Shown: in pieces, positions 19,098 through 63,119 of the stretch
Position numbering within the stretch: the stretch's first letter is position 1
Layout of the letters: each line of letters begins with the position of its first letter
NCBI RefSeq assembly: GCF_032191835.1
Contig: NC_083237.1
Span: forward strand, 17,980,001-18,044,000
Reading direction: 5' to 3'
Source of the DNA: Heteronotia binoei
Lineage: Eukaryota
DNA: 64,000 nucleotides
Notes under the pieces: generated by a model
The model's database searches: none
The model's input: the letters and a program-made list of their open reading frames with translations, nothing else
What the model was told of the DNA's origin: nothing
Program-made: the position numbers and the translations under genes

Positions 19098-20099
19098 TTA
19101 GTTTTTCTTACAGAGGAAGTACCTATGGACCACTTTCTTCATGGCCGTGGTGATCTCCTTGTTCCTCAGAGTGTAAATAATGGGGTTCAGGAGGGGGAAG
19201 ATGATTGTGTGAAAAACAGAGACTATCTTGTCAGGGGCATATTCATCAAAGGGCCGGGCATAGATGTAGATGGCAGGGCCAAACATGAAAATGACTATGG
19301 TGATGTGAGAATAGCAAGTGGACAAAGCCTTGCTGGCCAATTCGCCAGAGTTCTTCTTCAGCACAGTGAGCAAAAAGGCATAGGAAACCAAGAGGGCCAC
19401 AAAGCAGACCACAGAAATGAGGCCACTGCTAAAGATCATCACCAACTCCTCAGCAAAGGTGTTGGCACAGGTGATCCTCAACACTTGGGTGATGTCGCAG
19501 AAGTAGTTGTCCAGCTCGTTGGGCCCACAGAACGGGAGTCGAAGAATCAACACGACTTGGATGGTGGAATGGACAAAGCCCCCCAACCAAGAAAACAGCA
19601 CCAGGATGATGCACAGACGACGGGGCATCATGTTTGTATAGTGCAGGGGTCGGCATATGGCGGCATAGCGGTCATAAGCCATGACAGTGAGCAGGAACAT
19701 CTCAGAGGCCCCCACAAAATGGAGGAAGAAGAGCTGAGCGATGCATCCCCAGAAGGAAATTATCTTGCGTTCAGCAAAGAAGTCAACCAGCATCTTGGGA
19801 GCGGTGATGGAAGAGTACCAGATGTCCAAGAAAGCGAGATTGGCCAACAGGAAGTACATGGGTGAGCTGAGATGGGGTTCACTGCGGATGGTGATGATGA
19901 TTAGGATGTTGCTGGGCAAGACAATCAGGTAGAAAGTGAGGAAAACGGCAAAGAGGAAGAGCTGGACTCCACGCTGATGGGACAGTCCTGTCAGGATGAA
20001 TTCTGTCACTTCACTGCTGTTTCTCATCCCTTCAGGGTGTCTGGGAAGGGGAGGTGATTCTACCATCATAACTACGGCCACTCCACTACCATTCTCCAT
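19098..20099 (-). CDS. OR4M1-like: Olfactory receptor OR4M-like; start probably Met at 20099 (333 aa) or 20027 (309 aa)
   Basis: LDIWYSSITAPKML.DFF.ERKIISF.GCIAQLFFLHFVGASEMFLLTVMAYDRYAAICRPLHY and EELVMI.SSGLISVVCF match the recalled human OR4M1 closely. A polypyrimidine tract and CAG precede the ATG at 20099. Confidence 0.95.
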   Translation of the reverse strand: MENGSGVAVVMMVESPPLPRHPEGMRNSSEVTEFILTGLSHQRGVQLFLFAVFLTFYLIVLPSNILIIITIRSEPHLSSPMYFLLANLAFLDIWYSSITAPKMLVDFFAERKIISFWGCIAQLFFLHFVGASEMFLLTVMAYDRYAAICRPLHYTNMMPRRLCIILVLFSWLGGFVHSTIQVVLILRLPFCGPNELDNYFCDITQVLRITCANTFAEELVMIFSSGLISVVCFVALLVSYAFLLTVLKKNSGELASKALSTCYSHITIVIFMFGPAIYIYARPFDEYAPDKIVSVFHTIIFPLLNPIIYTLRNKEITTAMKKVVHRYFLCKKN

Positions 20100-20529
20100 T
20101 CTGTGGAGATCTGAGCAGGGGGCACCTGGATAGGAAAGGAAGGCTGAGAGAAAGAAGAGAGGAATGATGGGAAAGAGGAGATCAGGAATTCTCTTTGTCA
20201 TCAGATTAACAGTGAGAATAGTGACCCTGAGCCAGGCACATCCATTTACTCATCTAGACTTGCTTATCCATCCTGTAATAGAAAAACAAGATCGTTTCAG
20301 GGGATAGCCATGCTGATTTGCAATAGAATAATTAAATCTGGTGCTTTCACATATGCTAAATAATGCAGCTTCAATCCACTTCAGTGATCACCGGCAAGTG
20401 GATTTTGCCATTTCATATGGTAAACTCCAGTTGCAAAGTGCATTGAGAGTGGATTGAAAGTGCATTATTTAACATGTGTGAAGCTGGAAAGGGCCGTCCA
20501 GTCCAACTCAATGCAGGATCGGCCTAGAG

Positions 20530-27833: not shown

Positions 27834-28784
27834 CTAGCTTGTCGCCGGGTAGAAAGGACTTAATTTCTGCTTCCTTCCTTTGAGCTTCTCCAGGGCGCTT
27901 TTGAAATCTTTGTTCCTCAGTGTGTAAATGAAAGGGTTCAGGACAGGCGTGATGAGAGTGTAGAGAACAGCAACGGCTTTATCCATTGGGAAGCTACGAA
28001 AGGGACGGGCATAAATATAGATGCAGGGCCCAAAAATCAGGGTCACCACAGTGATGTGAGAGGCACAAGTAGAAACAGCCTTGCTCCGCCCTGGTGCAGA
28101 ACCTGCTCTCAGCTTGGCTAGTAGGATGGAGTACGATACCAGTAGCACCACAAAGCACATCAAGGTCACCAGGCCATTGTTGGACACCATAAGCAGCTCC
28201 ACCACAAATGTGTTGGTACAAGCCAGTTTGACCACCTGGGGGACATCGCAGTAGAAATTATCCAAAATGTTGGGACCGCAAAAGGGCAGCTGGACAATGA
28301 TGGCCACTTGAACGATGGAGTGGACAAAGCCACCCACCCAAGAGGCCCATACCAGCCCACCAAAGATGGTCCCGTTCATGATGGCCATGTAGCGCAAGGG
28401 GTAGAAGATGGCGACGTAGCGATCGTAGGCCATGATGGTCAAGAGAAAGATCTTGATGCCTCCGACAAAGTGGAAGAAGAAGATCTGGGAAACGCAGCCT
28501 CCGTAGGTGATGGTATTCGTCTTCTTTAGGGAGCCTACCAGCATCTTGGGAGCTGTGATAGTGGAATAGCAGAAATCCAGGAAAGAGAGGTTTCCCAGCA
28601 GGTAGTACATAGGAGTGTGGAGGCTGGGTTCCAAAACCGCTAGGCTTACAATCAAAAGATTGCCTGTCACGGTGACGGCATACACGGTTAAGAAGATAGC
28701 AAACAGCAGAAGCTTCATCTCTTGATTGGTGGCCAGCCCCAGAAGGATAAACTCTGTCACTGTGGTGTGGTTCTTCCCTTCCAT
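27834..28784 (-). CDS. OR4D5-like: Olfactory receptor OR4D-like, 316 aa
   Basis: FFFHFVGGIKIFLLTIMAYDRY, ELLMVSNNGLVTLMCF and RPFR.FPMDKAV match the recalled human OR4D5. Acceptor-like ctcctccctcccag lies ~30 nt upstream of the ATG. Confidence 0.94.
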   Translation of the reverse strand: MEGKNHTTVTEFILLGLATNQEMKLLLFAIFLTVYAVTVTGNLLIVSLAVLEPSLHTPMYYLLGNLSFLDFCYSTITAPKMLVGSLKKTNTITYGGCVSQIFFFHFVGGIKIFLLTIMAYDRYVAIFYPLRYMAIMNGTIFGGLVWASWVGGFVHSIVQVAIIVQLPFCGPNILDNFYCDVPQVVKLACTNTFVVELLMVSNNGLVTLMCFVVLLVSYSILLAKLRAGSAPGRSKAVSTCASHITVVTLIFGPCIYIYARPFRSFPMDKAVAVLYTLITPVLNPFIYTLRNKDFKSALEKLKGRKQKLSPFYPATS

Positions 28785-40518: not shown

Positions 40519-41525
40519 CAATATGGTGCTGTTTTAACTTGAAAGAGAACCATGGAATGTCTTAAGGCTCACAAGCAAGCTGCAAGGAGCAAAAGGACAC
40601 TGACCAAGCAGGGCACATTCTAAAAAGGCTGTGAGTGTTCATGTGTGTATGCAACAGAGTTAAGGAAACTGCCTTTGTGGAATAACCCTACTGCAAGAAA
40701 CAGGACATGCCAACACGTATCTCGTACCAAAATGAAGTCAAGGTGGAGAAGATGATAATTCTGAAAAAGGAAAAAAGAGAGCGTACCCTCTTAGGCCTTG
40801 ATCTGCTTGCAACAGAAATGTACAGCTAGCAGCATTTGGGAGGTGCAAACAGCTAATGAAGTTTGGCTGTAGTTTGGCTGAGGAATGGGCCCAGCGAGGA
40901 AACAGATGAGGGTCCATATATTGGCTGACTGACCTTCCCAGCTGACTGGCCACATCTCCCTCATGCTGCTTGGACTAGGATGTTGGAAGAAGGCCCCAAC
41001 ACTGATGGAGAATGAGGAAACTTAGCCCATTCAAAGTGGCCTGGGTGGGGTGGGGGTAGGTGGTGTTAATGGTGTGGCTGCTCTTCAGCCTGGCCTTCTC
41101 CCCCACCAGCCAACCTCCACTCCCACTTTGTTTCCATACTCAGCTGGCCCATGGCAGTCCCAAAGGCTGGATTGAGGGCTTCACCAATGAGGAATTCCAA
41201 GGAGAAGACCAGCCTGCCATTTTTGCCTCTTCCTGCTTCCTTTGCTAAGGCTGGAGAAAAATGCCAAGGAGAGTTAAGAGGTCAGTGGTGATTTTACATT
41301 CCAAGACAGGGCAAAACTGAACAATGGTTCTTCATGGTTGTTTGGGCTTCCAAGGAAGCACCCCTCCCCAACTCCTCTTTAACATTCTCATTTGCATATT
41401 AAGCCACACCCCAATGCTAAGGCAGCTGGAACAGTGTTCCTGTGCGTTCCTGCTCAAAAAAAGCCGTGGTTCTTGATATGGTGTCCCTTTCTCCCCCCCC
41501 CCCCCCCCCAGGTCCCAGGCTCGCC

Positions 41526-42464
41526 ATGAATGGATCCATCATTTCCGAGTTCATTTTGCTGGGATTTTCCTGCTCTCGCACTTTCCAGCTCACCCTGTTG
41601 ACCTGGGTCTTGGCCTGCTATGCCACTGTCCTGTTGGGCAACTTCCTCATTATGGTGACCGTCCGCGCAGAACGCCACCTCCTCCGTTCCCCCATGTATT
41701 TCTTCCTGTCCAATCTTTCTTTTATTGATATGTCCTTGGGTTCGGTGGCTGGGCCTAAGATGATAGCCAATCTGGTGATCTGCGGCCATGCCATTTCCTA
41801 TGGGGGCTGCATGGCCCAGCTCTTCTTCCTCCATTTCTTCGGCGGTGCAGAGATGCTCCTCCTCACCGTCATGGCCTACGACCGCTACGTGGCCATCTGC
41901 CACCCTTTGAGGTACATGGCCATCATGGACCGGCAGCGCTGTTTCAAGCTCCTTATGGTTTGCTGGGCAGGAGGCCTCCTTCATTCCACAATCCAAATGG
42001 TGGTGGTTGCCCAGCTACCATTCTGTGGGCCCAACATGCTGGACAATTTCTACTGTGACATTCCACAGGTCATCCGGTTGGCCTGTACAGAGACCTCCAT
42101 CATTGATTTACTCATGGTGGCCAACAGCAGCCTCCTCTCCCTGCCCTGTTTCTTAATCTTGCTGATCTCCTATGCTGTGATCTTGGCCACCCTAAAAGGA
42201 CGCTTCAGGAAAGGGGGTGGGAAGGCTCTCTCCACCTGCAGCTCCCACCTTATTGTAGTCAGCCTCATCTATGTGCCGTGCATCTTTGTGTATCTCAAGC
42301 CTTTCTCCAGTTCCTGGGTGGACAAAATAGCCTCCATGTTCTACACAGTTGTCACACCTGCCCTCAACCCAATTGTCTACACCTTGAGGAACCAAGAAGT
42401 GATAGATGCTATGGGGAAGCTGAGGAACAGGTGTATATTGTTTCCTCTTCGAGTAAAGGGATAA
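41526..42464 (+). CDS. OR4Q3-like: Olfactory receptor OR4Q-like, copy 1, 312 aa
   Basis: MNGS start follows a poly-C acceptor tract. HLLRSPMY has the one-residue insertion recalled for OR4Q3 (HLLQSPMY). MAYDRYVAIC, KALSTC, PALNPIVYTLRN are present. Confidence 0.92.
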   Translation: MNGSIISEFILLGFSCSRTFQLTLLTWVLACYATVLLGNFLIMVTVRAERHLLRSPMYFFLSNLSFIDMSLGSVAGPKMIANLVICGHAISYGGCMAQLFFLHFFGGAEMLLLTVMAYDRYVAICHPLRYMAIMDRQRCFKLLMVCWAGGLLHSTIQMVVVAQLPFCGPNMLDNFYCDIPQVIRLACTETSIIDLLMVANSSLLSLPCFLILLISYAVILATLKGRFRKGGGKALSTCSSHLIVVSLIYVPCIFVYLKPFSSSWVDKIASMFYTVVTPALNPIVYTLRNQEVIDAMGKLRNRCILFPLRVKG

Positions 42465-43589: not shown

Positions 43590-43810
43590 NNNNNNNNNNN
43601 NNNNNNNNNNNNNNNNNNNNNNNNNNNNNNNNNNNNNNNNNNNNNNNNNNNNNNNNNNNNNNNNNNNNNNNNNNNNNNNNNNNNNNNNNNNNNNNNNNNN
43701 NNNNNNNNNNNNNNNNNNNNNNNNNNNNNNNNNNNNNNNNNNNNNNNNNNNNNNNNNNNNNNNNNNNNNNNNNNNNNNNNNNNNNNNNNNNNNNNNNNNN
43801 NNNNNNNNNN
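43590..43810. other. Assembly gap
   Basis: Run of N; probably hides the L2 3' tail. Confidence 1.
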
Positions 43811-43969: not shown

Positions 43970-46953
43970 TTAGCAATTACTTTCTTCGTCAGCGAAAGCC
44001 AGTCGGAAGAGGAAGGTCTTGCAGGCCCTGCGGAACTGTTCAAGGTCCCGCAGGGCCCGCATTTCCTCTGGAAGTTGGTTCCATAGGTTCGGGGCTACAG
44101 AGGAGAAGGCCCGATTGCGGGTGCATTGCAGCTTCACCTCTCTCGGTCCGGGGGTGGTCAACAAGTTTTTTCCAGCTGACCTCAGTGCTCTCTGCGGTTC
44201 ATATGGGGAAGGACGGTCCATAAGGTAGACAGGTCCTCGACCATATAGGGCTTTAAAGGTAATGACCAGCACTTTGTAACGAACCCGGTATATAACTGGC
44301 AGCCAGTGCAGCTCGCGCAGTCCAGGCTGTATGTGCTCCCATTTAGGGAGCCCCAGCAACAGTCTGGCCGCTGCATTCTGCACCAGCTGCAGCTTCCGGG
44401 TTCGGTACAGAGGCAGCCCCATGTAGAGGGCATTACAGTAATCCAGTCTCGAGGTGACCGTTGCGTGAAGTACTGTTGCCAGATCTTGGCGCTCTAGGAA
44501 GTGAGCCAGCTGCCTTGCCCGCCTCAGGTGGAAAAAGGCTGACTTGGCAGTGGCTGCAATCTGGGCCTCCATTGATAATGAAGGCTCCAGTAGAACTCCC
44601 AGACTCCTAACCCGGTGCGCCACTTTCAGTGGTGCCCCGTCGAAGACCGGAAGAGGTATTTCCCTTTCCCGGGCGCCCCGACCCAGGCAAAGGACTTCTG
44701 TCTTCGCTGGATTCAGTTTCAGCCCGCTCCCCCTCAACCACGTTGCCATATCCTGCAAGGCCCGGTCTAAATTCTCAGGGACGCAGTCAGGCCGGCCGTC
44801 CATCAGCAGATAGAGTTGGGTGTCATCTGCATATTGATGGCACCCAAGTCCATATCTCCTGGCAATCTGGGCAAGAGGGCGCATATAGATATTGAATAAC
44901 ATTGGTGAGAGAACTGCCCCCTGAGGCACTCCACAATCCAGTGTGCGCCTCCGGGACCACTCGCCACCAATTGCCACCCTTTGTCCCCGATCCTCGAGGA
45001 AGGAGGAGAGCCATTGTAAGGCAGACCCCCTCACCCCTATATCGGCGAGGCGGCGGGTCAGTAGCTGATGGTCGACCATGTCGAACGCGGCCGACAGATC
45101 TAACAACATCAGCACCGCCACACTGCCCCGATCCAGGTGCCGTTGGAGATCATCTACCAGGGCGACCAGTACTGTCTCCGTCCCATAACCCGGGCGAAAG
45201 CCGGACTGGCAAGGGTCTAGGATGGAAGCGTCATCCAGAAAGCTCTGCAACTGCGACGCCACTGCCCTCTCTATTATTTTACCTAAAAACGGTAAATTAG
45301 AGACCGGTCGGTAGTTTGCCAATTCGGCCGGATCTGCTGTACTTTTTTTCAAGAGGGGTCGGACCAAGGCCCCTTTCAGGGGTGATGGAAAGCGCCCCTC
45401 TGAGAGGGATCTATTTATAATGTCCCGTAGAGGACATTCAAGCTCCCTCAGGCAGGATTTAGTTAGCCAGGAGGGGCATGGGTCCAGGTCGCAAGTTGTA
45501 GGGCGCACAGAGGAGAGAATTCCGTCAACTTCCTCCAGGCTGAGCGGGTCGAAATGATCCAGAGTTAAATCAGAAGACAGGCATAGGGCCTCGGGCTCAT
45601 GTACTGTATCTAAGGTGATGGGCAGGTCCTGGCGGAACAACGTGATTTTGTCTGCAAAAAATTTCGCAAAAGCCTCACAGCCTATTTCTAATTCTCTAAC
45701 GTTTGGTCTGCCCTGGGGCAGTGTAGTTAAATGTCCAATTATTTTAAACAATTGTGCCGGGCGCGAATTTGCAGACGCAATCTTGGCTGCGAAGTACTTC
45801 TTCTTCACGGCCTTGACTGCCATCTCATATGACCTCATAAACGTTCTGTAGGATGTTCTCGCCGCTTCACCACGAGTGCGCCGCCACTGCCTCTCTAGTC
45901 GCCGGAGTCCTTGTTTCAACCGGCGTAGCTCCAGGGTATACCAAGGAGCCAGCCTTGAACGAGGGCGCAGAGGACGTCGGGGTGCGATCTCATTGATTGC
46001 CCCAGATAGCCGGTCTTGCCAGGCATCAACCAGGGCATCAAGGGAATCGCAAGGGGGCCAAGGATCCCAAAGAGCCGTTTGGAACTGTTCCGGGTCCATC
46101 AGGCTCTGCGGGTGAGCCAAAATAGGCTCTCCACCCTTACAGGGTTGTGGTAGCGTCTCCATACGAGCCTTGAGGGCTAAGTGATCCGACCATGGTATCG
46201 CCTCCGTTGCGATTTCGTTCACTTTAATCCCAGCCGCAAAGGTCAGATCTAATGTGTGCCCAGCCTGATGTGTGGGAGTCGTAACAAATTGGGAGAGTCC
46301 CAGTGTCGCCATGGAAGACACTAGGTCCATCGCCTGAGTGGAAGCCGCGTCATCGGCGTGGACATTGAAGTCACCCAGGACCAGAAGCCCTGGGTACTCC
46401 AACGCCCAGCCGGACACCGCCTCCATCAGGGATGGTAAGGCGCTGGCCGGTGCGTTAGGCGGACGGTACACCAGCCAGATCGCCAACCTCTCCCCGACAT
46501 CTAACGCAAGGCCGACACATTCAACACCGTCGATCTTTGGGGCCGGGAGGGCCCGGAAGGAGTAAGCCTCCCATATGAATACCGCCCCCCCCCCGCCCCC
46601 CCAATCCGCGACTGGTGGAAGACCGAGTAACCCGGGGGAGTCATCTGGGAGAGTGCCATTGTCTCTCCCTCTTGAACCCAGGTCTTGGTCACGCAAGCCA
46701 GGTCTGCATCCTGCCGAAGCAGGAAGTCCCTAATGGTCTCGATCTTATTATTTATAGACCTGGCGTTGCATAACACCAGTGTCGGACGCGGGCAATTTCT
46801 CTTGGCCCCCCTTCTTGTCACCGTTGGGATGGGAAGTAGACTAGAAGGGGGCTGAGCACTGTTTTGTCTCTGTCTCCTTCTCTCATATCTCCGTCCATTC
46901 CCACCGTCATATCTTCCCCTCCCCAGGAGCACTGGAATCCCCTGACCAGTCAT
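43970..46953 (-). pseudogene. L2 ORF2 (endonuclease plus reverse transcriptase) with one frameshift in a G-run at ~46585-46602
   Basis: LCNARSINNK...VTKTW, GDFNVH, GHTLDL, SDH, NYRPVSNLPFLGK, QSGFR, LDLSAAFD, YADDTQLY, RLDYCN, LQLVQNAAARL. Confidence 0.9.
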
Positions 46954-47349: not shown

Positions 47350-47755
47350 TGTCGGTGCGGGTGCTAGCAGAGAGAGCTGTGAGATGTGCCCGACACTGAG
47401 CTCCAGGAAAGAAATCAGCCAGACACCTGCAGCTAGTGCCAAAGTAGTGTATTTACAGTATATACAACTCGTGCTCACTAGTGCAGTCCAATATATTAAT
47501 CACAGGAACAAAATGCTTTGCCAGCACGTCCACTCTCAAAGAGAGACCTGTGCATTACAGACACAGTCCACTTATAGTTCAGTCAGCCAATCCTGGCAGT
47601 CCACTCTCATGCTGACTCAGCAGGTTCCTTCACTTGTCTTCAGCCGGCTCAAACCAGCCTGTTGATAAGGTCACTGTGACCTAGCCTGCCGGCTAGATCA
47701 CCAGCTGTCATTACAGAGCTGTCAACCTGGGTTAAGATAGATTCCTTAACCAACA
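47350..47755 (-). mobile_element. Solo LTR (406 bp) of a copia family related to the element at 59393
   Basis: Termini TGTCGG...CCAACA; 5-bp TSD AGGGT at 47345-47349 and 47756-47760; colinear similarity with 59393-59790. Confidence 0.92.
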
Positions 47756-49482: not shown

Positions 49483-50905
49483 TATTTATTTATTTATTTT
49501 AGAATTTATATCCCGCCCTTCCCACAAGTGGCTCAGGGCGGCTTCCAACAATAAATCCGACACAAAAATTAAACAATATTTAAACATGTAAGGAATTAAA
49601 CATTTAAAAACAGATAAAACCTTAAAAATTAATAAATATTCCAAATATATAAAAGAAATCTGGCAACTTGCATTAAATTCTCAAGCTAGGTGTAAGCTAG
49701 CCGGAAGAGGGTCGTCTTACAGGCCCTGCGGAACTGAACAAGGTCCCGCAGGGCCCTCACCTACTCCGGCAGCTGATTCCACCATGTAGGGGCCATAACA
49801 GAGAAGGCCCTTTCTCTGGTGGATTTCAAGCGGGCTTCTTTTGGCCCAGGGATAGTAAGGAGATTTTGTGTTCCCGACCTCAGTACTCTCTGGGGAACAT
49901 GTGGGGAAAGACGGTCCTCCAGATAGACAGGTCCCCAGCCATATAGGGCTTTAAAGGTGATAACCAGCACCTTGTACCAGACTCGGTATATCACTGGGAG
50001 CCAGTGCAGGGTCCGGAGACCTGGCTGAATGTGTCCCCACTTTGGGAGACCCAGTAACAGCCGGGCCGCGGCATTCTGCACCAGCTGCAATTTCCGAGTT
50101 TGGGACAGGGGCAGCCCCATGTAGAGGGCATTACAGTAGTCCAACCTCGAGGTGACCGTAGCATGGATCACTGTTGCTAGGTCGTCGCGCTCCAGGAAGG
50201 GGGGCAACTGCCTTGCCCGCCTAAGGTGAAAAAACGCAGACTTGGCAGCGGCTGCTATCTGAGCCTCCATCTTTAAGGAAGGCTCCAATAGCACCCCCAA
50301 GCTCCTGACCCTGTCCGCCGCTATCAGCGGCGCACCGTCAAAGACTGCTAGGGGGATTCCCCCTCCCGGGCCACGGCGACCCAGGCAAAGGACCTCTGTC
50401 TTCGCAGGATTAAGCTTCAGCCCGCTCAGTCTGAGCCACTCAGCCACGGCATGTAATGCCCGATCTAGATTTTCCGGGACGCAGGTTGGCTGGCCGTCCA
50501 TCAATAGATAGAGCTGGGTGTCATCAGCGTACTGGTGACACCCTAGCCCATACCTTCGGGCAATCTGGGCAAGAGGCCGCATATAGATGTTAAATAACAT
50601 CGGGGAGAGAACCGCCCTTGGGGCACACCACAATCGAGTGTGCACCTCCGGGATAGCTCCCCCCCAACTGCGACCCTTTGTCCCCAACCTTCCAGGAAAG
50701 AGGAAAGCCACTGTAAGGCCAACCCCTGAATCCCCGCGTCGGCGAGGCGACCCTTCAGTAGCCGATGGTCGACCGTGTTGAACGCAGCCGACAGGTCTAA
50801 CAGCATCAGCACTGCCGAGCCACCCCGATCCAGATGCCGTTGAAGGTCATCTACTAGGGCAACCAGCACCGTCTCCATCCCATGTCCCGGGCAAAAGCCA
50901 GACTG
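49483..50905 (-). mobile_element. 5'-truncated L2 (RT 3' half, frameshifted)
   Basis: LLDLSAAF, YADDTQLY, RLDYCNALY; (ATTT)n tail at about 49483-49500. Confidence 0.9.
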
Positions 50906-51033
50906 AAAAAAAGAACATTGTGAAAGAAGCAGAACATTGCCAAGAAAGCACATGCTGTGTATCTGACTTCCCCTAGACCTGCACATAAATAGAATTTTCT
51001 GGGCCATAGACTTGATCTTACTGCATTGGGAAG

Positions 51034-51245
51034 GGATGGTGGCTCAGTGTTGGTAGAGCATCTGCTTGGTATGCAGAAGGTCCCAGGTTCAATTACTGGC
51101 ATTTCCAACTAAAAAAGGGCCAGGCAAATAGGCATGAAAAACCTCAGCTTGAGACCCTGGAGAGCCGCTGCCAGTCTGAGTAGACAAGACTGACTTTGAG
51201 GGACCGAGGGTCTGATTCAGTAAAAGGCAGCTTCATATGTTCATA
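51034..51245 (+). mobile_element. tRNA-head SINE with a CR1-like tail; copies at ~3240, 42826, 54540 and 57597
   Basis: ggctcagtg.tggtagagcatctgcttgg...ggttcaa head; gacaagactgactttga..gaccgagggtctgattcag tail. Confidence 0.75.
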
Positions 51246-53330: not shown

Positions 53331-54915
53331 ACAGAGAACCTATTCACACAAGCTATCTGTTTTCATTTTTTCTCAAGGATAACTGGATCACAGCCTGCCT
53401 ATATTTCTCCTTTTGCTGATCTGGATTTTTTTTCCTCTCCTTTTCCCACTTTTGCTTGACTTTTCTGAAAGATCCTAAAGCCTGAATGATGCAGGGTTGT
53501 CTTGGAAGGGCATTTCAGTAGCCTGAGATTCAAGGTACCAGTCAAGAATCAGCTTTATATTGACTAGAACAGTTACTTCTATGAATGGCTCTTTAATCTC
53601 CATTCCCCCTAGCACTGTATTCCTTTTTCTTGCAAATTTCCTAGTTATTTTAAGATCAAAATCTGCAACAATTAGTCATGATTCAGATCAGTGTAGATGA
53701 AATTGCTGTAGCAAGCATTTCTAAAAGCCGAGCCACTTTTCAGTGAGCACCCCGTGTGAAGTACAACCAAGTCAAAACTGAATATAAAACACCACAATTA
53801 ATTAAAATTGTTAAAACAAAGAAGTCAATCAGCAAAGGACAGCAAGATATCATTTGCTCACTAGTAACTCCTTAAAATCCAGAAATCACTTAAAAAATAG
53901 TTTTAATCCGCCTCTGAAAGTCTACCAGTTAGAAGATGCCAGGCGGGAAGGCATGTTATTCTTCTGCCAGTTGCTGTGAAATACCCACATTTCATAAGAA
54001 TTTCAGCCTAGGCACAGAATTCAGCTCCTGGATAAACTTTTCCTTAAAAACAAAAGCAAGTCTCTTGTCCTTACGGTTATGGAGAGATTTGAAATGCTTA
54101 CTGAAATCTCAGGAGCTGCAGTTGGAAAGGATGTAGCCGGGGTGCGATGCTTCTGTACTCTGCCCTGCCTCCTCTCCTTTATAATTAGGTGAACCATAAA
54201 AGTAGCTCAATAAAAACTGTGTGAAATGAAATTGCCTGATCTATACAGCTCGTTAACACAGGAGGTGGGTTCCCCCAGAAACATTTACTTGTAGAAAGAA
54301 ACATGGGAGAGCAGATTGGAGCGAGCTCTACAATTTAACAGAATAAAATGAAGGAGAAAACTCTTGGATTCCATTCACAGCTCCCCGAGGTTAAAGTAGC
54401 ATAAGGATGTAATATTGTCAAGTTGCAACTGATATGGCAACCCCTCAAGGGGCTTTCAAGGCAAGCAATAAGCAGAGGTGGTTTGCCTTCTTCCACATAG
54501 CAATGCTGGTCTTCCTTGGTGGCCTCCCATGCAAGTACGGTGGCTCAGTGGTAGAGCATCTGCTTGGTAAGCAGAAGGTCCCAGGTTCAATCCCCGGCAT
54601 CTCCAACTACAAAGGGTGCAGGCAAGCAGGCATGAAAAACCTCAGCTTGAGACCTTGGAGAGCCGCTGCCAGTCTGAGTAGACAATACTGACTTTGATGG
54701 ACGCAGGATCTGATTCACTATAAGGCAGCTTCATATGTTCATATGTACTCATGATGGCCAACCCTGTATAGCTTCCAAGTTCCGGCAACCTGGACTCATC
54801 TGGGCTCTTCAGACTGTTGAATGTAGAACGTAGTATACTAGGATAGAAGAGCAGGCCTGAGGGAAAATTAAACACTATCCCTACTCTTTTTCTCCTGCCA
54901 GAACCAGCCATCATC

Positions 54916-55863
54916 ATGAATGGATCCGCCATTTCAGAGTTCATTCTGCTGGGCTTCTCCTGCTCCGGCATTTCTCACTTCTTCCTTTCCTCTTTGGTCT
55001 TGGTCTGCTGCATCACCATTCTTCTGGGCAACTTCCTGATCATGGTGACGGTGCGATCCGAGCCCCGGCTCCTCCACTGCCCCATGTATTTCTTCCTAGC
55101 CAACCTGTCTCTCCTAGATGTGTCCTTGGGTTCAGTGGCTGCTCCAAAGTTAGCAGTTGACTTGTTAAACTGCGGCCACACCATTTCCTATGGGGGTTGC
55201 ATGGCCCAGCTTTTCTTCCTCCACTTCTTTGGGGGTGCTGAGATGCTCCTCCTCACGCTCATGGCCTACGACCGCTACGTGGCCATCTGCCACCCACTGA
55301 GGTACATGGCCATCATGGACCGGCAACTCTGCTTCAGGCTCCTCCTGCTTTGCTGGGCAGGAGGCCTCCTTCATTCCACCATTCAGATGGTGGCAGTTGC
55401 CCAGTTACCATTCTGTGGGCCCAACGTGCTGGACAATTTCTACTGTGACATCCCACAAATGATCGCACTAGCTTGTACGGAGACTTCCGCTGTTGAGATT
55501 CTCATGGTGGTCAATAGCAGCCTGTTAACTCTGCCCTGTTTCCTGGCCTTGTTGGTTTCCTATGCCACAATCTTGGTCGCCTTCTGTGGCCGCTTTGGGA
55601 AGGCAGGCAGGAAGGCTTTTTCCACTTGCATCTCCCACTTGATGGTGGTCAGCCTCTTCTACGTGCCTTGTGTCTTTGTGTACCTGAAGCCCTCCTCCAG
55701 CTCCCAGGTGGACAAGATAGCCTCCGTGTTCTACATGGTGGGCACCCCTGCCCTCAATCCCCTTATCTATGCTCTGAGGAACCAAGAGATTAAGGAGGCC
55801 ATGGGGAAATGGAAGAGCAAGCAAAAACTATTCCCGATTGCTGCAAATAGAGTACATGTGTGA
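54916..55863 (+). CDS. OR4Q3-like: Olfactory receptor OR4Q-like, copy 2, 315 aa
   Basis: Colinear paralogue of 41526-42464 with full OR motifs; acceptor-like ctctttttctcctgccag just upstream. Confidence 0.92.
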   Translation: MNGSAISEFILLGFSCSGISHFFLSSLVLVCCITILLGNFLIMVTVRSEPRLLHCPMYFFLANLSLLDVSLGSVAAPKLAVDLLNCGHTISYGGCMAQLFFLHFFGGAEMLLLTLMAYDRYVAICHPLRYMAIMDRQLCFRLLLLCWAGGLLHSTIQMVAVAQLPFCGPNVLDNFYCDIPQMIALACTETSAVEILMVVNSSLLTLPCFLALLVSYATILVAFCGRFGKAGRKAFSTCISHLMVVSLFYVPCVFVYLKPSSSSQVDKIASVFYMVGTPALNPLIYALRNQEIKEAMGKWKSKQKLFPIAANRVHV

Positions 55864-56935: not shown

Positions 56936-59644
56936 TATGTTCCCTCACAACAAAGTCAAAGAACTTTCTATCTATATAATGGTGCTTCAAGTGCATATGG
57001 CTATGAACAGGAGGCCGTTCTTGATGCAGGTTCCGCAACATAAAAGTTACAAAGATATTATTCACTTGTGGAATTCAGTTCCCAAAGACGTGGGACAACT
57101 TGGGCACCCTTGTGGGGAAAGGTCAACTGTAGCTATGAAACCTCAATATTCAGAGCGGGTTACCTCAAATTGCAAGATTCTGGGATGTAAGAAGGGCTTG
57201 TCCTCAACACCCTCCCCAAATGAAGACACAAGACCACCATACATGAGTTTAATTGGTTTATTTAAACAGATGGTTTACATCAGAAGCTATTAGCCAAATT
57301 AACGACACAATGTGCTAGGTAGCCTACTGCTAATGGCAATCTTCCCCTTCCCTAGCCTGCTGCACACACAATGAAAGATCTGGTTGATGCTGCTCAGCAC
57401 CAAGGTTGTTCCAGCCTGTCCCACTGTACAATGAATGATGGTCTGTTACACAAATGGACCATTATTGTGTGATGCCTCAAGGTGATCTCTGATTCACCCT
57501 ACCTATAATGAGCATCTTATCCTATTCTCACCATCCTAATTATGGTCTAACCATTCCAAGGACCAAGCTAATTTATCCCAACCTCCCTTAGATAGGTGAG
57601 GGGCTGTTGCTTTGCATGCAAAAGGTTCCAGGTTCAATCCCTAGCACCTCCAATTAAAAGGACCAAGTAGTAGATCATGTGACCCTGAAAAACCAATCTG
57701 AGTACACATTTCTGACCCCGATGGCCCAGCTATCTTCTTAAATGTAAGGCAGCTTGTGTGTGTTCATTTGTGACAACACGAAGCAGGTGAGAAGCAGTTT
57801 CCTAAATTCCCAATTCTTTGGGGGAATTTTGGGTCTTCATTTTTTGTTTTTGAAATCTGGCTTTTTATGTGTATGATAAATCTCCTTCATTAATTTCAAA
57901 GTCATATAATTAAGCCCAAGGCTCTGGCCAAACATGTTTAAAACAATTCTTCCCCAGAGTTCCCTCAAAGTGTTTGGGAATCAGATTCCAGCGGCAAGAA
58001 CCCCAAAGGCTGATGGGCATTTTTCATAGGGAACGAACAGAGCTCGGGAAAGATTTGTAGCACTGAGAAAGAGCACACAACAAAAAGCTCCTGGTCCAGT
58101 TTCACTGGTTACTTCACTGGCTTCTGTGCCATAATATGGACATAGAACTCAACTGAGTGATTCAAATTTAAATAAATGCAAAAGTCAGTTCTTCTGATAT
58201 ACGTGAGGTCCAAATAAGCCAAAAGTAGGCTGTGGGGTGGGTGGTGGTGAAAACATTTTAGAAAGGATTTGAGCCAAAACCAAACTTTGGCCTGAACATA
58301 AATCTGAAGCACCTCATGGGAGGAGACAGCAGGTCTTTTTTGTAGCAGGAACTCCTTTGCATATTAGGCCACACCCCCATGATGTAGCCAATCTTCCTGG
58401 AGCTTACAGTAGGCCCCATACTAAGAGCCCTGCAAGCTCCAGGAGGACTGGCTCCATCACGGGGGTGTGGCCTAATATGCAAAGGAGTTCCTGCTACATA
58501 AAAAGCTCTGCGAGACAGCATCCTTTGGGGTTTATCTGGTTCCAGTTGAGAAAACTGGTCTGAAGCTGGATAAAAACCAAACGTTACATCATTAAAACTC
58601 AACATAATTTGGGCAGAGGACAAGAACAACACACTAAACTGTAGCAGCCCCAAGAAAGATTAGCCCGCCACTGCAAAAGCACTCGAGAGCAATTCCACTT
58701 TAAGTAATATCCATTGAATTAAAAGATTTGAGCCTGGTAGCACCTGACCAGCAAGATGTTCAGCGTAGAGGCTTTTGAGAATCAGAGTTTTGACTCTTAG
58801 AATCATAAAGTTGGAAGGGACCTCCAGGGTCATCTAGTCCAACCCCCTGCACAATGTAGGAAACTCACAAACACCTCCCCCTAAATTTACAGGATCCTCA
58901 TTGCTGTCAGATGGCCATCCAGCCTCTGTTTAAAAACCTTCAAGGAAGGAGAGCCCACCACCTCCCGAGGAAGCCTGTTCCACTGAGGAACCGAAAGCGT
59001 TTGTCCTGGAAATCTTGTAGTTATTTATGGTGCTACTTGCTGTTCTACTGCAGACCAAGAAGGCTATCCACCTGAAAGTATCTTCAGTGGGATAAGGTGT
59101 GTGATAGGAGGCGACCCAAAAGATGGATCTTTGTCTCCAGTGATGCTCAAGTATAAATGGAAGGTGAATACAGCTTAGAAAATTCACACTAGCTTCATAA
59201 TCTTCTTTTCAGATGGGTCACTCCAACACCAAACCTACATGTTCATTATGTTACTGCCAGCTTTGGGGGGATCGTGTGCAAAAAAAGCCCCCAAAGGTCT
59301 TCTCCCCTTCTCTGTCCACCAACAGCCTCCAACTTACAGCATTCTTCCTACCCACCTACTTTCATGCCCTGCCTCTGAATTCTTCCTCTGCTTGTCGGAG
59401 CGGGAGTAGCAGAGTGAGGGAGATGACTTGCCCGACACAGGGCTTCAGGAAAGAAAATCAGGCAGACACGTGCAACTAGTGCCAAAAGGTGTATTAACAT
59501 ATATACACGACAAGTGCTCTCTTGTGCAGTCTATACAATATCACCTCCACGGACAAAGTGCTTCGCCTAACCACCATCTCACAGGGAGAGACCTGTGTGA
59601 TGCACACACAGATCATATATAGTCCAAGCAGCCAATCCTGGCCG

Positions 59645-59657
59645 TGCTGACTCAGCA
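59645..59657. promoter_or_regulatory. Consensus T-MARE (Maf/AP-1) site in the LTR; also at 62966-62978 and 47610-47622
   Basis: TGCTGACTCAGCA exact match. Motif match only. Confidence 0.7.
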
Positions 59658-59702
59658 GATTGCATCACTTGGCTTCTGCCGGCTCAAGCCGGTCTGCTGA
59701 TC

Positions 59703-59717
59703 AGGTCACTGTGACCT
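59703..59717. promoter_or_regulatory. Consensus estrogen response element in the LTR; also at 63024-63038 and 47668-47682
   Basis: AGGTCActgTGACCT equals the AGGTCAnnnTGACCT consensus. This is a motif match only; function is untested. Confidence 0.7.
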
Positions 59718-59875
59718 AGCCTGGCAGCTAGATCACCAGCTGTCATACTGTAGCTGTCGGACTGGGTTTATGTAGATTCTTGCTCCAACACACCTCCTAA
59801 TCTATTTAAACCCAGTGCACCAAAACACTTTACACAGTTTACATACATGTCCACCAGCAACATTACAGTTCATAT

Positions 59876-62536
59876 TTACGTAGCTCGGAACCCTTTCCGG
59901 AATTCGTTCAGGAACTCATCATGATTGTAAAACACATCATCGTGTTCCTGTTCAGCCAGCTCTTTCAGACGCTTGGCTTCAGCCTCCTTCTCCCTTGCCT
60001 CGCACTCTGCCACCCAGGCTTTCCATTTCTTAGCCTTTTCTTTTAACATTTCCTCAAATCCGGGTGGGTCTGGATTGACAGTCAGAGTGACATAGGGACA
60101 CTTGTACCTAGCGGGACGTTGGCCTTTGGTGGACCTGGCAGACACCCGTGGCCCTGTGCTTGGACCAGCTTTGTCTTCTTCGGGTTGCTCTGTTCCCACC
60201 TCCTGGGCTGGTTGCTCTGCCCCTGTAATTGGGTGTTGAACCTCCTGACTCTCACACTTTACCTCCAGTTCCTGCATTTGAGGCTCTGCCTCCTGACTCT
60301 GCTCGTCAGGCTCTGTGCCAGCATTCGGCTCACCTTCTCCAGCCCCACTGGGTGCCACCTCCTGGGCTGGAGTTCTGGGCTGCGCTCCAACATCGTTATC
60401 GCTACTTGGCAGCAGGACAAATTGTTTCTGCAAGGAGTGCAACCTTGGCCAGCTGCTTTCTTCATTGAACTGGGCACTCTTACTAAGTGTTATCTTGCTT
60501 TTGCTATTGCAGAAACGATAACACCTGGCCCTTGGCTTGTAGCCCAGAAAAATTAGGCTCTCTGCCCGGACATCCCCCTCCCCGCTACTCGTGGAGTGGA
60601 TGCCAACCCGAGCCCGTGACCCAAAGACTTTTGAAGAACTCAAATCTGGGGTCTTGTTCAACAGTAACCTGTAAGGCACATTTTTCACAGTATTACACCA
60701 AACCCTATTTTGTAAAAAAACAGCTGCATGTATGGTTTCTGCCCAATAGGTCATTGGCAGTTGTGCATCCTCTAACATGCAATACATCACATTCTGCAAT
60801 ACAGCCCCATGCCCATTTTCTCGGGGCGTTGCCGGGTTCGTCAGACGGTGGGCAATGCCCTTGTTCTCCAGCCAACGTTTCATCTGGTTAGATAAGAATT
60901 CCCCCCCTCTGTCGGTTTGTACAGCTAGGAGATTAACCCCTAATTGTCTCTCCACTGCTTTGACCCACTTGGTGAATGTCTTATACACCTCAGACTTATG
61001 CACCATGGTGAAAACCCACGCGTACCTCGTGTGGTCGTCGGTGGCCACCAAGCAGTATCTCCTCCCCGACAGACTCTTTGGCAATGGGCCAATAACGTCT
61101 AAATGGACTAGTTCCAGGGCTCGTGTGCTTTCCCTTGAGCTTTCTTTAGCAACAGCACACGCCTTGCTTTTGGTCTTCTTGCAGACCTGGCAATCCAAGT
61201 AACATTTGCAAGGATTTACTTTCCAACTAGGCACAAGCTCCAGGGTTTTCTTTAACGCCCTAAATCCGCAGTGCCCAAGTCTCCTATGGAGCAAATGTAT
61301 ACAATTATTGTGCACAGGCTCATTCGACACCTGAGCCACCTGGGCACAATCACTCTGGACCACATACAGTTTACCTTCCCTCTTTCCTGTCACAAGCAAC
61401 TTTCCCCCACCTCCCAGGATTTTGCAGCAGGTTTTCTCAAATCTCACCTGGTATCCCTGGTCAAACAGTGTGCTAACACTCAACAGGTTAGACTGCAGTG
61501 AGGGTACATACAACACATTTTGCAACATACATTTCAGTGCAGGAAATTCCACATTGCCGGAGCAAACAGAATTGGCAGTGGTCCCATCAGCCAATCTCAC
61601 ATACTTATGCTCAGGACTGTCAATGTTTTTCAACAACTCCTTCTCGCAGCAGAGATGGCTCGTTGCCCCGGAGTCTAAAATCCAAGCAGACCCTGTGCTC
61701 TCTACTGCAGACGTGACCAGCCGGGTTGCTTCCTCACACGGGCTGGCGGTCCTCCGCTCTCGCCGCACACGCCCCCGCCTCTTCTCCCTCTCAGGGCAAG
61801 CTCGGAGCAGGTGCTGCGACGACCCGCATCCATAGCAGCGACGGACTGCAAACGCAGTCGGCTCCACTTCCTCCACCTTCGGACGCCTGCCAGCAGCAAA
61901 AGCTGGCTCATTCTTGGCTGTCTTCCCGGACACACCGATAACAGCACGCTGCCCGGCCGACACCCCCGGACAGCTCACGGCCGCAATTCTCTCTTGGAAG
62001 TCAAGCAGGTGGGCACAGACGTATTCCATGGTCAGGGTCGCTACGTCCACCGTCTCCAGAGAAGTTATCAGGGGAGTGTACTCAGGTGGCAACGACGACA
62101 GCAAAATGTACACTCTGTCGTCTGGAGCTACAGTCTTGCCTCTTGCCTCCAGCTCAACGAAACAGTCCGTTAGCCGTTTGATGTGATCTTTCACACACCC
62201 TCCAGCCGGCATAACGGTGCGGAACATCCTCCTTGTCAAGGCCACGAGGGAACCAGCAGTGGTGCTAACATGCACCGCACTCAACGCGTCCCAGGCAGCC
62301 TTGGGAGTGTCCTTCCCTCGCACATAAACCAGCTGGTCATCTCCTATAGACAGCACTATGTTGGCCAGTGCCTTATCCGATAACACAGTCTCGGCAGGAG
62401 ATAAGTCAGCAGGGGGGTTACTCACGAACAGCCATTGCCCTTCACGCTTGAGGTAGTGTTGCATTCTCAGGCTCCACACCGCGTAGTTGGCTGAGGTGAG
62501 CTTCTCAACGGCTACTCCAAGCTGTTGCTGAGCCAT
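59876..62536 (-). CDS. Copia Gag-protease-integrase polyprotein, 886 aa
   Basis: KLTSANYAVW (copia Gag), CYGCGSSQHLLRAC (CCHC), WILDSGATSH (protease), HRRLGH...CQVC, VHLDVIGP, QTDRGGEF. No YVDD RT motif. Confidence 0.92.
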   Translation of the reverse strand: MAQQQLGVAVEKLTSANYAVWSLRMQHYLKREGQWLFVSNPPADLSPAETVLSDKALANIVLSIGDDQLVYVRGKDTPKAAWDALSAVHVSTTAGSLVALTRRMFRTVMPAGGCVKDHIKRLTDCFVELEARGKTVAPDDRVYILLSSLPPEYTPLITSLETVDVATLTMEYVCAHLLDFQERIAAVSCPGVSAGQRAVIGVSGKTAKNEPAFAAGRRPKVEEVEPTAFAVRRCYGCGSSQHLLRACPEREKRRGRVRRERRTASPCEEATRLVTSAVESTGSAWILDSGATSHLCCEKELLKNIDSPEHKYVRLADGTTANSVCSGNVEFPALKCMLQNVLYVPSLQSNLLSVSTLFDQGYQVRFEKTCCKILGGGGKLLVTGKREGKLYVVQSDCAQVAQVSNEPVHNNCIHLLHRRLGHCGFRALKKTLELVPSWKVNPCKCYLDCQVCKKTKSKACAVAKESSRESTRALELVHLDVIGPLPKSLSGRRYCLVATDDHTRYAWVFTMVHKSEVYKTFTKWVKAVERQLGVNLLAVQTDRGGEFLSNQMKRWLENKGIAHRLTNPATPRENGHGAVLQNVMYCMLEDAQLPMTYWAETIHAAVFLQNRVWCNTVKNVPYRLLLNKTPDLSSSKVFGSRARVGIHSTSSGEGDVRAESLIFLGYKPRARCYRFCNSKSKITLSKSAQFNEESSWPRLHSLQKQFVLLPSSDNDVGAQPRTPAQEVAPSGAGEGEPNAGTEPDEQSQEAEPQMQELEVKCESQEVQHPITGAEQPAQEVGTEQPEEDKAGPSTGPRVSARSTKGQRPARYKCPYVTLTVNPDPPGFEEMLKEKAKKWKAWVAECEAREKEAEAKRLKELAEQEHDDVFYNHDEFLNEFRKGFRAT

Positions 62537-62682
62537 CGTGCCGACTCCTCCTCACGGCCGGCTGCCGACGTCCCTCTGGCTCTCAAACAGAGAACGGTGG
62601 TGCTTCTGTGTCCTTCACCGGCGTTCCTCGCCTCCGGCTCTTTCCAAACTCACAGTCAGCTCAACTCTCAACTCTCTCCTCC

Positions 62683-62713
62683 GCGCAGCGGAAGCGCCCT
62701 GGGCCCATAACCC
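62683..62713 (-). promoter_or_regulatory. Extended primer-binding site complementary to the 5' half of initiator tRNA-Met
   Basis: The + strand gcgcagcggaagcgccctgggcccataaccc matches the recalled tRNAi-Met nt 10-40 at 29 of 31 positions. Confidence 0.88.
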
Positions 62714-63119
62714 TGTCGGAGCGGGAGTAGCAGAGTGAGGGAGATGACTTGCCCGACACAGGGCTTCAGGAAAGAAAATCAGGCAGACACGTGCAACTAG
62801 TGCCAAAAGGTGTATTAACATATATACACGACAAGTGCTCTCTTGTGCAGTCTATACAATATCACCTCCACGGACAAAGTGCTTCGCCTAACCACCATCT
62901 CACAGGGAGAGACCTGTGTGATGCACACACAGATCATATATAGTCCAAGCAGCCAATCCTGGCCGTGCTGACTCAGCAGATTGCATCACTTGGCTTCTGC
63001 CGGCTCAAGCCGGTCTGCTGATCAGGTCACTGTGACCTAGCCTGGCAGCTAGATCACCAGCTGTCATACTGTAGCTGTCGGACTGGGTTTATGTAGATTC
63101 TTGCTCCAACACTGCTTAC

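What the first reader, a model, noticed from the sequence alone, without database searches (positions are those of the whole stretch)
59393..63111. Young Ty1/copia element with an open Gag-PR-IN ORF but no reverse transcriptase or RNase H
Seen: LTRs that read identical over 398 bp, a perfect 5-bp TSD, an intact PBS and PPT, and one stop-free 886-aa ORF filling the 2,923-bp interior. After the integrase and an acidic linker, the protein reaches the usual pre-RT segment (RVSARSTKGQRPARY...DPPGFEEMLKEKAKKWK). It then ends in about 45 charged residues instead of RT, and the PPT follows about 85 bp later. Established: LTRs are identical at insertion, autonomous copia elements need RT-RNase H, and copia is scarce in amniotes. 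Inference: this is a recently mobile non-autonomous lineage that makes its own capsid and protease and borrows RT from a helper, analogous to plant TR-GAG elements. An in-frame new C-terminus suggests selection rather than random decay.
Basis: partly seen in the sequence, partly recalled or inferred. Interest (0 to 1): 0.8.

Follow-up and report, generated by a model that had tools for sequence, protein, structure and literature searches.

The report
Young defective copia retrotransposon in gecko
This is a recently inserted copia-type jumping gene in a gecko-like lizard genome that has lost its reverse transcriptase and a key integrase residue, so other elements must have moved it; this kind of defective element is already known, and one window cannot show whether it belongs to a family.

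Summary
The element has two identical 398-bp LTRs, a perfect CTGCT target-site duplication, a PBS, a short PPT and a 2,923-bp interior. One 886-aa ORF fills that interior and carries copia Gag, protease and integrase domains but no RT or RNase H.

- The PBS pairs with the 5' half of initiator tRNA-Met, as in Drosophila copia.
- The integrase lacks its catalytic glutamate through a clean 4-residue in-frame deletion. Integrase as well as RT must therefore have come from another element.
- The host is a gecko-like squamate, and squamates hold record copia numbers, so "scarce in amniotes" adds no surprise here.

The non-autonomous, recently mobilised reading is well supported. The claims of an amplified RT-less lineage and of selection on the ORF could not be tested, because no other copy of this family is reachable with these tools. 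The "in-frame C-terminus" argument is weak because the origin of the tail is unresolved.

Two related elements were found elsewhere.
- An unidentified eukaryote assembly carries an independent RT-less copia family. At least five copies share one junction, and pN/pS is about 0.2.
- The closest relative with DNA, from Podarcis, is a full-length RT-bearing copia with the same PBS type.

Verdict: a new member of a known kind, of moderate-to-low interest.

The parts
59388..59392 (.). Target-site duplication, left copy (CTGCT)
   Evidence: Identical 5-mer at 63112-63116.
59393..59790 (-). 3' LTR in element orientation, 398 bp, TG..CA ends
   Evidence: 100% identical to 62714-63111. In element orientation it carries TGAGTCA, an inverted CCAAT box and a TATATA box at positions 137, 155 and 170. 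The first two are invariant in the related solo LTR.
59791..59800 (-). Short polypurine tract (TTAGGAGGTG in element orientation) abutting the 3' LTR
   Evidence: Read directly from the sequence. The Podarcis relative has AAGGAGGAG at the same place.
59801..59875 (-). 3' untranslated stretch of unresolved origin
   Evidence: No significant similarity to any part of two full-length relatives.
59876..59968 (-). Last ~30 codons plus the stop codon: charged C-terminal tail beyond the end of detectable homology
   Evidence: Homology to the closest full-length relative ends at residue ~856. The tail scores no better than shuffles against RNase H C-termini.
59969..60436 (-). Acidic linker and conserved pre-RT segment (residues ~701-856)
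   Evidence: Aligns to the segment just upstream of Pfam RVT_2 in P0001, P0007, P0102 and the Podarcis element.
60437..61411 (-). Integrase (HHCC finger, core, SH3-like domain), residues ~376-700
   Evidence: Pfam gag_pre-integrs, rve and SH3_retrovirus. HHCC and both catalytic Asp residues are present.
60809..60814 (-). Site of the 4-residue in-frame deletion in the integrase core that removed the catalytic Glu (between residues 575 and 576)
   Evidence: The gecko ORF reads ENG-HGAVLQ. Podarcis reads ENGVAESRGGVLQ, and 30 of 30 other relatives have NG.(A/S)ER. No acidic residue remains in that stretch.
61412..61726 (-). Aspartic protease, residues ~271-375, with the DSGA active site
   Evidence: Pfam Pol_BBD, 71 bits. 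None of 13 conserved columns is violated.
61727..62536 (-). Gag with CCHC zinc knuckle, residues 1-270
   Evidence: Pfam Retrotran_gag_2, 82 bits, plus DUF4219. One of 12 conserved columns is violated.
62683..62713 (-). Primer-binding site complementary to the 5' half of initiator tRNA-Met
   Evidence: 29 of 31 nt match tRNA positions 10-40, with 15 nt perfect at 62699-62713. The same PBS type occurs in Podarcis L008 and in L002-L006.
62714..63111 (-). 5' LTR in element orientation
63112..63116 (.). Target-site duplication, right copy (CTGCT)
47350..47755 (-). Solo LTR of a related family (406 bp, 76% identical to the element's LTR) with its own 5-bp TSD AGGGT
   Evidence: It shows that a second, older insertion of this LTR lineage lies in the same 64 kb.

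Best explanation
This is a young insertion of a doubly defective Ty1/copia retrotransposon in a gecko-like squamate genome. It keeps everything needed in cis: LTRs with promoter-like motifs, a PBS of the half-tRNAiMet type, and a PPT. It also keeps one continuous ORF for Gag, protease and a catalytically disabled integrase.

It has no reverse transcriptase or RNase H, and the integrase has lost its catalytic glutamate. Its RNA must therefore have been reverse-transcribed and integrated by enzymes supplied in trans by an RT-bearing relative. The integrase of that relative made the typical 5-bp duplication.

Shown: the anatomy, the two lesions, the youth of the insertion, and the presence of a related LTR family nearby.

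Inferred: both lesions predate the insertion. At least one was inherited from an already defective parent, which would make this a non-autonomous sublineage rather than a one-off. Gag and protease may still be made and used.
For: - Identical LTRs and a perfect TSD. At 1e-9 substitutions per site per year this gives a 95% upper age of about 4 My, or about 2-7.5 My across the rates tried.
- No RVT_2 or RNase H in the ORF or anywhere in the window.
- Homology stops where RT starts in the relatives.
- The integrase Glu is deleted, while all 30 aligned full-length relatives and the closest relatives (Podarcis P0101 and P0145, and P0102) keep it.
- Conserved positions of Gag (1 of 12 violated) and protease (0 of 13), the DSGA site, the CCHC knuckle and the HHCC finger are all intact.
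- There are two separate lesions in a copy with zero LTR divergence. This argues that it was already defective when it moved.
- The closest relative with DNA, from Podarcis lilfordi, is a full-length RT-bearing copia with the same PBS type. Squamates are rich in copia (PMC11889832). Helpers are therefore plausible.
- An independent RT-less copia family elsewhere shows that this architecture can persist and amplify under purifying selection.
Against: - Only one copy is in evidence. No helper, no second copy and no shared junction could be examined.
- An intact ORF in a very young copy is inherited from its parent and does not by itself show selection.
- The excess of integrase conserved-site changes (12 of 46) is mostly shared with the closest relatives and so clade-specific. 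Only the 4-residue deletion is a clear lesion.
- Both deletions could in principle have arisen in the single reverse-transcription event that made this copy.
Confidence: 0.6

Rival explanations
1. One-off, dead-on-arrival copy. An autonomous copia RNA suffered template-switch deletions during the reverse transcription that produced this insertion, so no RT-less lineage exists.
For: - Identical LTRs with an otherwise intact ORF are what a first-generation deletion derivative would look like.
- No other copy was found in the window or the databases.
- Internal deletions made during reverse transcription are common in retroelements (established knowledge).
Against: - It needs two independent in-frame deletions, about 1.4 kb and 12 nt, in one cycle.
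- Otherwise it needs an integrase-dead parent, which is already a non-autonomous lineage.
Confidence: 0.27
2. The element inserted as a full-length autonomous copia and lost RT-RH and the integrase residues by deletions in place afterwards.
For: Zero differences in 796 bp of LTR bounds the age but does not exclude a few post-insertion events.
Against: - The most likely post-insertion divergence is near zero.
- Two deletions, both leaving the long ORF open and one excising RT-RH almost exactly, are unlikely in that time.
Confidence: 0.07
3. Assembly artefact: the interior was collapsed or mis-joined, and the real locus holds a complete element.
For: - The window contains three N gaps elsewhere.
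- Repeats are prone to mis-assembly.
Against: - No gap lies in or next to the element.
- The reading frame runs smoothly across the junction.
- The LTRs, TSD, PBS and PPT are all in register.
- A collapse would not explain the 12-nt integrase deletion.
Confidence: 0.04

Closest known systems
Squamate Ty1/copia elements. Only the Mtanga clade has been reported in Lepidosauria (PMC11889832). The closest relative found here is a full-length element in Podarcis lilfordi, OX395139.1 at ~8.09 Mb (L008).
   Same: - Copia-type Gag, protease and integrase, 38-52% identical at the protein level.
- Half-tRNAiMet PBS directly after the LTR.
- Similar PPT and TGTTGG LTR start.
   Different: - The Podarcis element has RT-RNase H and the integrase Glu, is 4.6 kb long and has 265-bp LTRs.
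- The gecko element lacks both, is 3.7 kb long and has 398-bp LTRs with no detectable LTR similarity.
- Clade assignment rests on RT/RNase H, which is absent here.
Drosophila copia
   Same: - Domain order Gag-PR-IN.
- 5-bp TSD.
- Priming from the 5' half of initiator tRNA-Met (Kikuchi 1986, as cited in PMC10275265 and PMC5371799).
   Different: - Drosophila copia is autonomous.
- It is a distant lineage.
Semi-autonomous and non-autonomous plant LTR retrotransposons: TR-GAG, RLG_Sabrina_SA (GAG-Pro), and sugar-beet families with GAG/PROT or partial POL remnants
   Same: - LTR elements that keep part of the coding capacity.
- They are thought to rely on an autonomous partner for RT (PMC9744471; PMC13570524).
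   Different: - Those are plant families, shown to be multi-copy and co-evolving with partners.
- TR-GAG keeps only GAG.
- Here protease and a nearly whole integrase are kept, and only one copy is known.
RT-less copia family found in passing in ENA assembly ERZ26858995 (L002-L006)
   Same: - Same architecture: LTR, half-tRNAiMet PBS, one ~842-aa Gag-PR-IN ORF, no RT/RNase H, 5-bp TSDs, identical LTRs.
   Different: - Only ~32% identical to the gecko protein.
- Independent deletion with a different junction.
- The integrase Glu is retained.
- At least five copies share the junction, with pN/pS ~0.2.
- Host unknown.
Mouse IAP I-delta-1 and ETn/MusD pairs (from memory, not tested here)
   Same: Deleted or non-coding LTR elements that are mobilised in trans by full-length relatives and can be the most active members.
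   Different: - They are retrovirus-derived (Retroviridae-like) elements, not copia.
- Their deletions are of different regions.

Membership tests
Ty1/copia LTR retrotransposon (superfamily) | Copia-type Gag, aspartic protease and integrase, with integrase placed upstream of the RT position | tested here: met
   Pfam PF14223, PF22936, PF13976, PF00665 and PF25597 occur in that order. The conserved pre-RT segment follows the integrase.
Ty1/copia LTR retrotransposon (superfamily) | LTRs with TG..CA ends, a 5-bp target-site duplication, and a PBS and PPT next to the LTRs | tested here: met
Autonomous copia element | RVT_2 reverse transcriptase and RNase H encoded | tested here: not met
   No Pfam hit. 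No tblastn hit with the RT-RH of relatives.
Autonomous copia element | Integrase with a complete D,D,35E catalytic triad | tested here: not met
   Both Asp residues are present. The Glu was removed by a 4-residue deletion.
Mtanga clade of copia (the only clade reported in Lepidosauria) | Placement within the clade in an RT/RNase H phylogeny | not testable with these tools
   The RT/RNase H region is absent from the element, and no reference Mtanga sequences are at hand. The only indirect support is the squamate host and the closest relatives being Podarcis copia.
TR-GAG elements | Non-autonomous LTR element whose only retained ORF is GAG, with no enzymes | tested here: not met
   Protease and integrase domains are retained. 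Definition as given in PMC13570524.
Semi-autonomous LTR retrotransposon (sensu PMC9744471) | Intact ORF for some but not all replication proteins | tested here: met
   An open 886-aa Gag-PR-IN ORF with intact Gag and protease motifs.
Semi-autonomous LTR retrotransposon (sensu PMC9744471) | Multi-copy population that co-exists with an autonomous partner | not testable with these tools
   The host assembly cannot be searched. The protein databases hold no close relative.

The most novel reading that the evidence does not exclude
The gecko element is one member of a persistent, amplifying RT-less copia lineage whose Gag-protease (and open integrase) ORF is kept by selection. Lineages of this kind would recur in animals, as the independent family in ERZ26858995 shows. 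They would have gone unnoticed because metazoan copia surveys classify elements by their RT/RNase H domain.
Probability: 0.35. Interest if true: 0.55.

Novelty: new member of a known kind. Interest (0 to 1): 0.33.

Why it matters
If the gecko copy is one of many, squamate genomes would host 'semi-autonomous' copia parasites that supply their own capsid and protease but take RT and integrase from relatives. Squamates are already the richest known animal reservoir of copia.

That would extend a relationship documented mainly in plants to vertebrates. It would also mean that RT-based surveys undercount copia-derived DNA.

The element also implies that a working copia RT and integrase were active in this genome within the last few million years. 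As a single defective copy, it is an ordinary by-product of retrotransposition.

Tried and rejected
1. Looking for other copies.
- A blastn and tblastn comparison of the window against itself found only the element and one related solo LTR.
- Three word-indexed protein searches (whole ORF, tail piece, Gag-PR piece) and one exhaustive HMMER search found nothing closer than 43% identity.
- The exact protein is not on record.

2. Origin of the C-terminal tail. By eye it resembled the RNase H C-terminus (KHI..AD..TK..LGL).
- A profile of 37 C-termini scored it no better than shuffles.
- Local alignment to 115 relatives was not significant.
- Only the Podarcis C-terminus gave a marginal result, with 103 of 3000 shuffles scoring as well or better, and nothing once the last 9 residues were dropped.
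- A rival resemblance to the RT N-terminus was equally marginal: 16 nt at 94%, E 0.056.
- I therefore leave the breakpoints and the frame relation unresolved.

3. General integrase decay. The element violates 12 of 46 conserved integrase columns, against a mean of 2.5 in full-length elements. Most of these changes are shared with the closest relatives, so I do not claim general integrase decay.

4. Rfam search of the PBS region for a tRNA half found nothing useful. Folding it was uninformative.

5. Logan contig L001 (845-aa Gag-PR-IN ORF) has no recognisable LTR or PBS in its ends. It is not counted as a verified RT-less element.

6. Domesticated host gene: rejected because of the LTRs, TSD, PBS and PPT.
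Full report
**1. The observation**

The element occupies window 59393-63111 on the minus strand.
- The two LTRs (59393-59790 and 62714-63111) are 398 bp, identical at every position, and end in TG..CA.
- The pentamer CTGCT flanks both ends.
- The interior is 2,923 bp.
- One ATG-initiated ORF, 59876-62536(-), encodes 886 residues. With the ORF's own base composition, 886 stop-free codons have a chance probability of about 1e-19.
- Pfam finds, in order, copia-type Gag (PF14223, 82 bits), the Pol beta-barrel protease domain (71 bits), the GAG-pre-integrase domain, the integrase core (rve) and the SH3-like integrase C-terminal domain. It finds no RVT_2 and no RNase H.
- tblastn with the RT-RNase H parts of three full-length relatives finds nothing anywhere in the 64-kb window.
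- No N run lies in or beside the element.

**2. Where the protein stops resembling a complete copia polyprotein**

Four full-length relatives were compared: P0001, P0007, P0102 and the Podarcis element in L008. They align from Gag through the integrase, the acidic linker and the conserved pre-RT segment. The alignments end between residues 844 and 862 of the gecko protein.

In those relatives Pfam RVT_2 starts 3 to 8 residues after the aligned end. The whole RT catalytic domain and RNase H, roughly 450-480 residues, are missing. About 30 further codons, a stop and 85 nt lead to the PPT.

I could not establish where those last ~175 nt come from.
- They score no better than shuffles against a profile of RNase H C-termini and against 115 relatives.
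- They give only a marginal score against the Podarcis C-terminus, with 103 of 3000 shuffles as good or better.
- They give an equally marginal nucleotide match to the Podarcis RT N-terminus.

It would be weak even if true.

**3.

In an alignment with 30 full-length relatives, the gecko protein keeps these sites:
- the protease DSGA site;
- the CCHC knuckle;
- the integrase HHCC finger;
- both catalytic aspartates.

All 30 relatives have the motif NG.(A/S)ER, which carries the catalytic glutamate. The gecko protein is four residues shorter there and has no acidic residue.

The closest relatives (Podarcis P0101 and P0145, and P0102) make the gap clean. They read ENGVAE(S/C/R)..GVLQ and the gecko protein reads ENG-HGAVLQ, so V-A-E-S/R is missing. 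The D,D,35E glutamate is essential for retroviral-type integrases (established knowledge). This integrase should therefore be catalytically dead.

A count of conserved columns gave these violations:
- Gag: 1 of 12;
- protease: 0 of 13;
- integrase: 12 of 46, against a mean of 2.5 in full-length elements.

Most of the integrase changes are shared with the Podarcis relatives. I count only the deletion as a clear lesion.

**4. Cis elements**

The 31 nt abutting the 5' LTR are complementary at 29 positions to nucleotides 10-40 of initiator tRNA-Met as printed in PMC8216282 and PMC12775451. The 15 nt next to the LTR are perfect and end in the anticodon loop.

This is the half-tRNA priming described for Drosophila copia (Kikuchi 1986, cited in PMC10275265 and PMC5371799).

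The same PBS type directly follows the LTR in two other places:
- the Podarcis full-length element;
- the unrelated RT-less family described in section 7.

The PPT is short, AGGAGG(T)G. In element orientation the LTR carries an AP-1-like TGAGTCA, an inverted CCAAT box and a TATATA box within 40 nt. The first two are invariant in a 76%-identical solo LTR at 47350-47755, which has its own TSD, AGGGT. At least two related LTR families have therefore inserted in this 64 kb.

**5. Host and background**

The window is an olfactory-receptor cluster with LINE and SINE insertions. One of its receptor proteins clusters at 90% or more identity with a Gekko japonicus protein. The host is therefore a gecko or a close relative.

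A metazoan-wide survey reports the following (PMC11889832):
- no copia in birds, mammals, turtles or crocodilians;
- record numbers in Squamata, which held 66% of all copies found;
- only the Mtanga clade in Lepidosauria.

That survey classifies elements by RT/RNase H, so an element like this one would be invisible to it. A copia element in a gecko is not in itself surprising.

**6. How it most likely works**

Shown: the copy cannot make RT, RNase H or an active integrase. It nevertheless carries a fresh insertion signature of identical LTRs and a 5-bp TSD.

With zero differences in 796 bp, the 95% upper age is about 3.8 My at 1e-9 substitutions per site per year. The range is about 1.9 to 7.5 My for rates of 2e-9 to 5e-10.

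Inferred:
- The RNA was packaged, reverse-transcribed from a tRNAiMet half and integrated by proteins from an RT-bearing relative that was active in the same genome at that time.
- Two independent lesions sit in a copy with no LTR divergence. At least one was therefore probably inherited from an already defective parent, which points to a non-autonomous sublineage rather than a first-generation accident.
- Intact Gag and protease motifs are compatible with the element contributing its own capsid and protease. In so young a copy, however, they are also what simple inheritance predicts.

I put 0.6 on the sublineage reading. The alternatives are:
- a one-off dead-on-arrival copy, 0.27;
- deletions in place after insertion, 0.07;
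- mis-assembly, 0.04.

**7. Evidence from elsewhere**

No close relative of the gecko protein is reachable. The best hits were:
- 43% identity, to a Podarcis lilfordi protein;
- 36% identity, to a full-length element.

Searches with the tail piece and with the Gag-PR piece found nothing close.

Two loci are nevertheless informative.

First, the Podarcis locus (L008 5580-10195) is a 4.6-kb copia with these features:
- 265-bp LTRs that are 99% identical;
- the same PBS type;
- a full RT-RNase H;
- a pol ORF that ends about 18 nt before the 3' LTR.

This shows what a complete member of the clade looks like.

Second, an unidentified eukaryote assembly (ENA ERZ26858995) holds an independent RT-less copia family, with these features:
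- The family has 253-bp LTRs. Both LTRs are 100% identical in four of the five copies examined; for L004, cut by the contig end, only 141 nt could be compared. They are 98.8% identical in the fifth copy (L006).
- The four copies with both flanks available have different 5-bp TSDs.
- Each copy has the half-tRNAiMet PBS and one 841-842-aa Gag-PR-IN ORF that runs into the 3' LTR.
- None has RT, and all share one junction.
- Between copies, synonymous divergence is 6-9% and non-synonymous divergence 1-2.4%. The ratio is about 0.2 in each of Gag, protease and integrase.
- Each copy is young, so these differences arose while the RT-less lineage was replicating. Either its ORF is under purifying selection, or it keeps recombining with a selected helper.
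- Its integrase keeps the catalytic Glu.

It does not show that the gecko copy belongs to such a family.

**8. Comparison with what is known**

Non-autonomous and 'semi-autonomous' LTR retrotransposons that keep part of their coding capacity are well described in plants. Examples are TR-GAG, wheat RLG_Sabrina_SA with an intact GAG-Pro ORF, and many sugar-beet families (PMC13570524, PMC9744471).

The gecko element works like these. It is not a TR-GAG element, because it keeps protease and integrase. It is a copia by every testable structural criterion except the RT itself. Clade membership (Mtanga) cannot be tested without RT.

I file it as a new member of a known kind.

**9. Verdict**

- Interest is 0.33.
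- The most novel reading not excluded is a persistent, selected RT-less copia lineage in squamates, one of a recurrent and overlooked animal class. I give it a probability of 0.35 and an interest of 0.55 if true.

Noticed in passing
L002 5724-8773; L003 2224-5273; L004 1-2938; L005 2224-5270; L006 2223-5270 (ENA ERZ26858995, host unknown): An independent RT-less copia family. It has 253-bp LTRs (identical in 4 of 5 copies), distinct 5-bp TSDs, a half-tRNAiMet PBS, and an 841-842-aa Gag-PR-IN ORF with one shared junction and no RT/RNase H. Between copies pS is 6-9%, pN is 1-2.4% and pN/pS is ~0.2 in each domain. LTR divergence between copies is only 1.2-2.4%.
   Followed up: partly
L008 5580-10195 (Podarcis lilfordi OX395139.1, ~8.09 Mb): Closest relative with DNA. 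It is a 4.6-kb full-length copia with 99%-identical 265-bp LTRs, the same half-tRNAiMet PBS, and RT-RNase H present but interrupted by frame shifts.
   Followed up: partly
window 47350-47755: Solo LTR (406 bp) that is 76% identical to the element's LTR, with its own TSD AGGGT. The AP-1-like and CCAAT motifs are conserved between the two LTR families.
   Followed up: yes
window 43970-46696 (-): Open 908-aa LINE ORF2 (endonuclease plus RVT_1) next to an assembly gap (43590-43810). A related, more decayed copy lies at ~49694-50905.
   Followed up: no
window 9503-10438, 19098-20201, 27834-28784, 41442-42464, 54916-55863: Five open olfactory-receptor ORFs (7tm_4), so the window is an OR gene cluster. 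One receptor clusters at 90% or more identity with a Gekko japonicus protein.
   Followed up: partly
window 51033-51245 and 54540-54743; also 16775-16843: tRNA-headed SINE copies. Two of them are 90% identical over 195 nt.
   Followed up: no
P0088 (Pogona vitticeps 'contactin-associated protein-like 2'), residues 478-553: An annotated host protein ends in a copia protease (Pol_BBD) domain. This is probably a gene model that runs into a copia insertion.
   Followed up: no
L001 (Logan ERR14657248), ORF 298-2835: An 845-aa Gag-PR-IN ORF with no RT on a 3.15-kb contig; three further members of its 90% cluster are also 845 aa. No LTR or PBS is recognisable at the contig ends, so its RT-less status is unverified.
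   Followed up: partly
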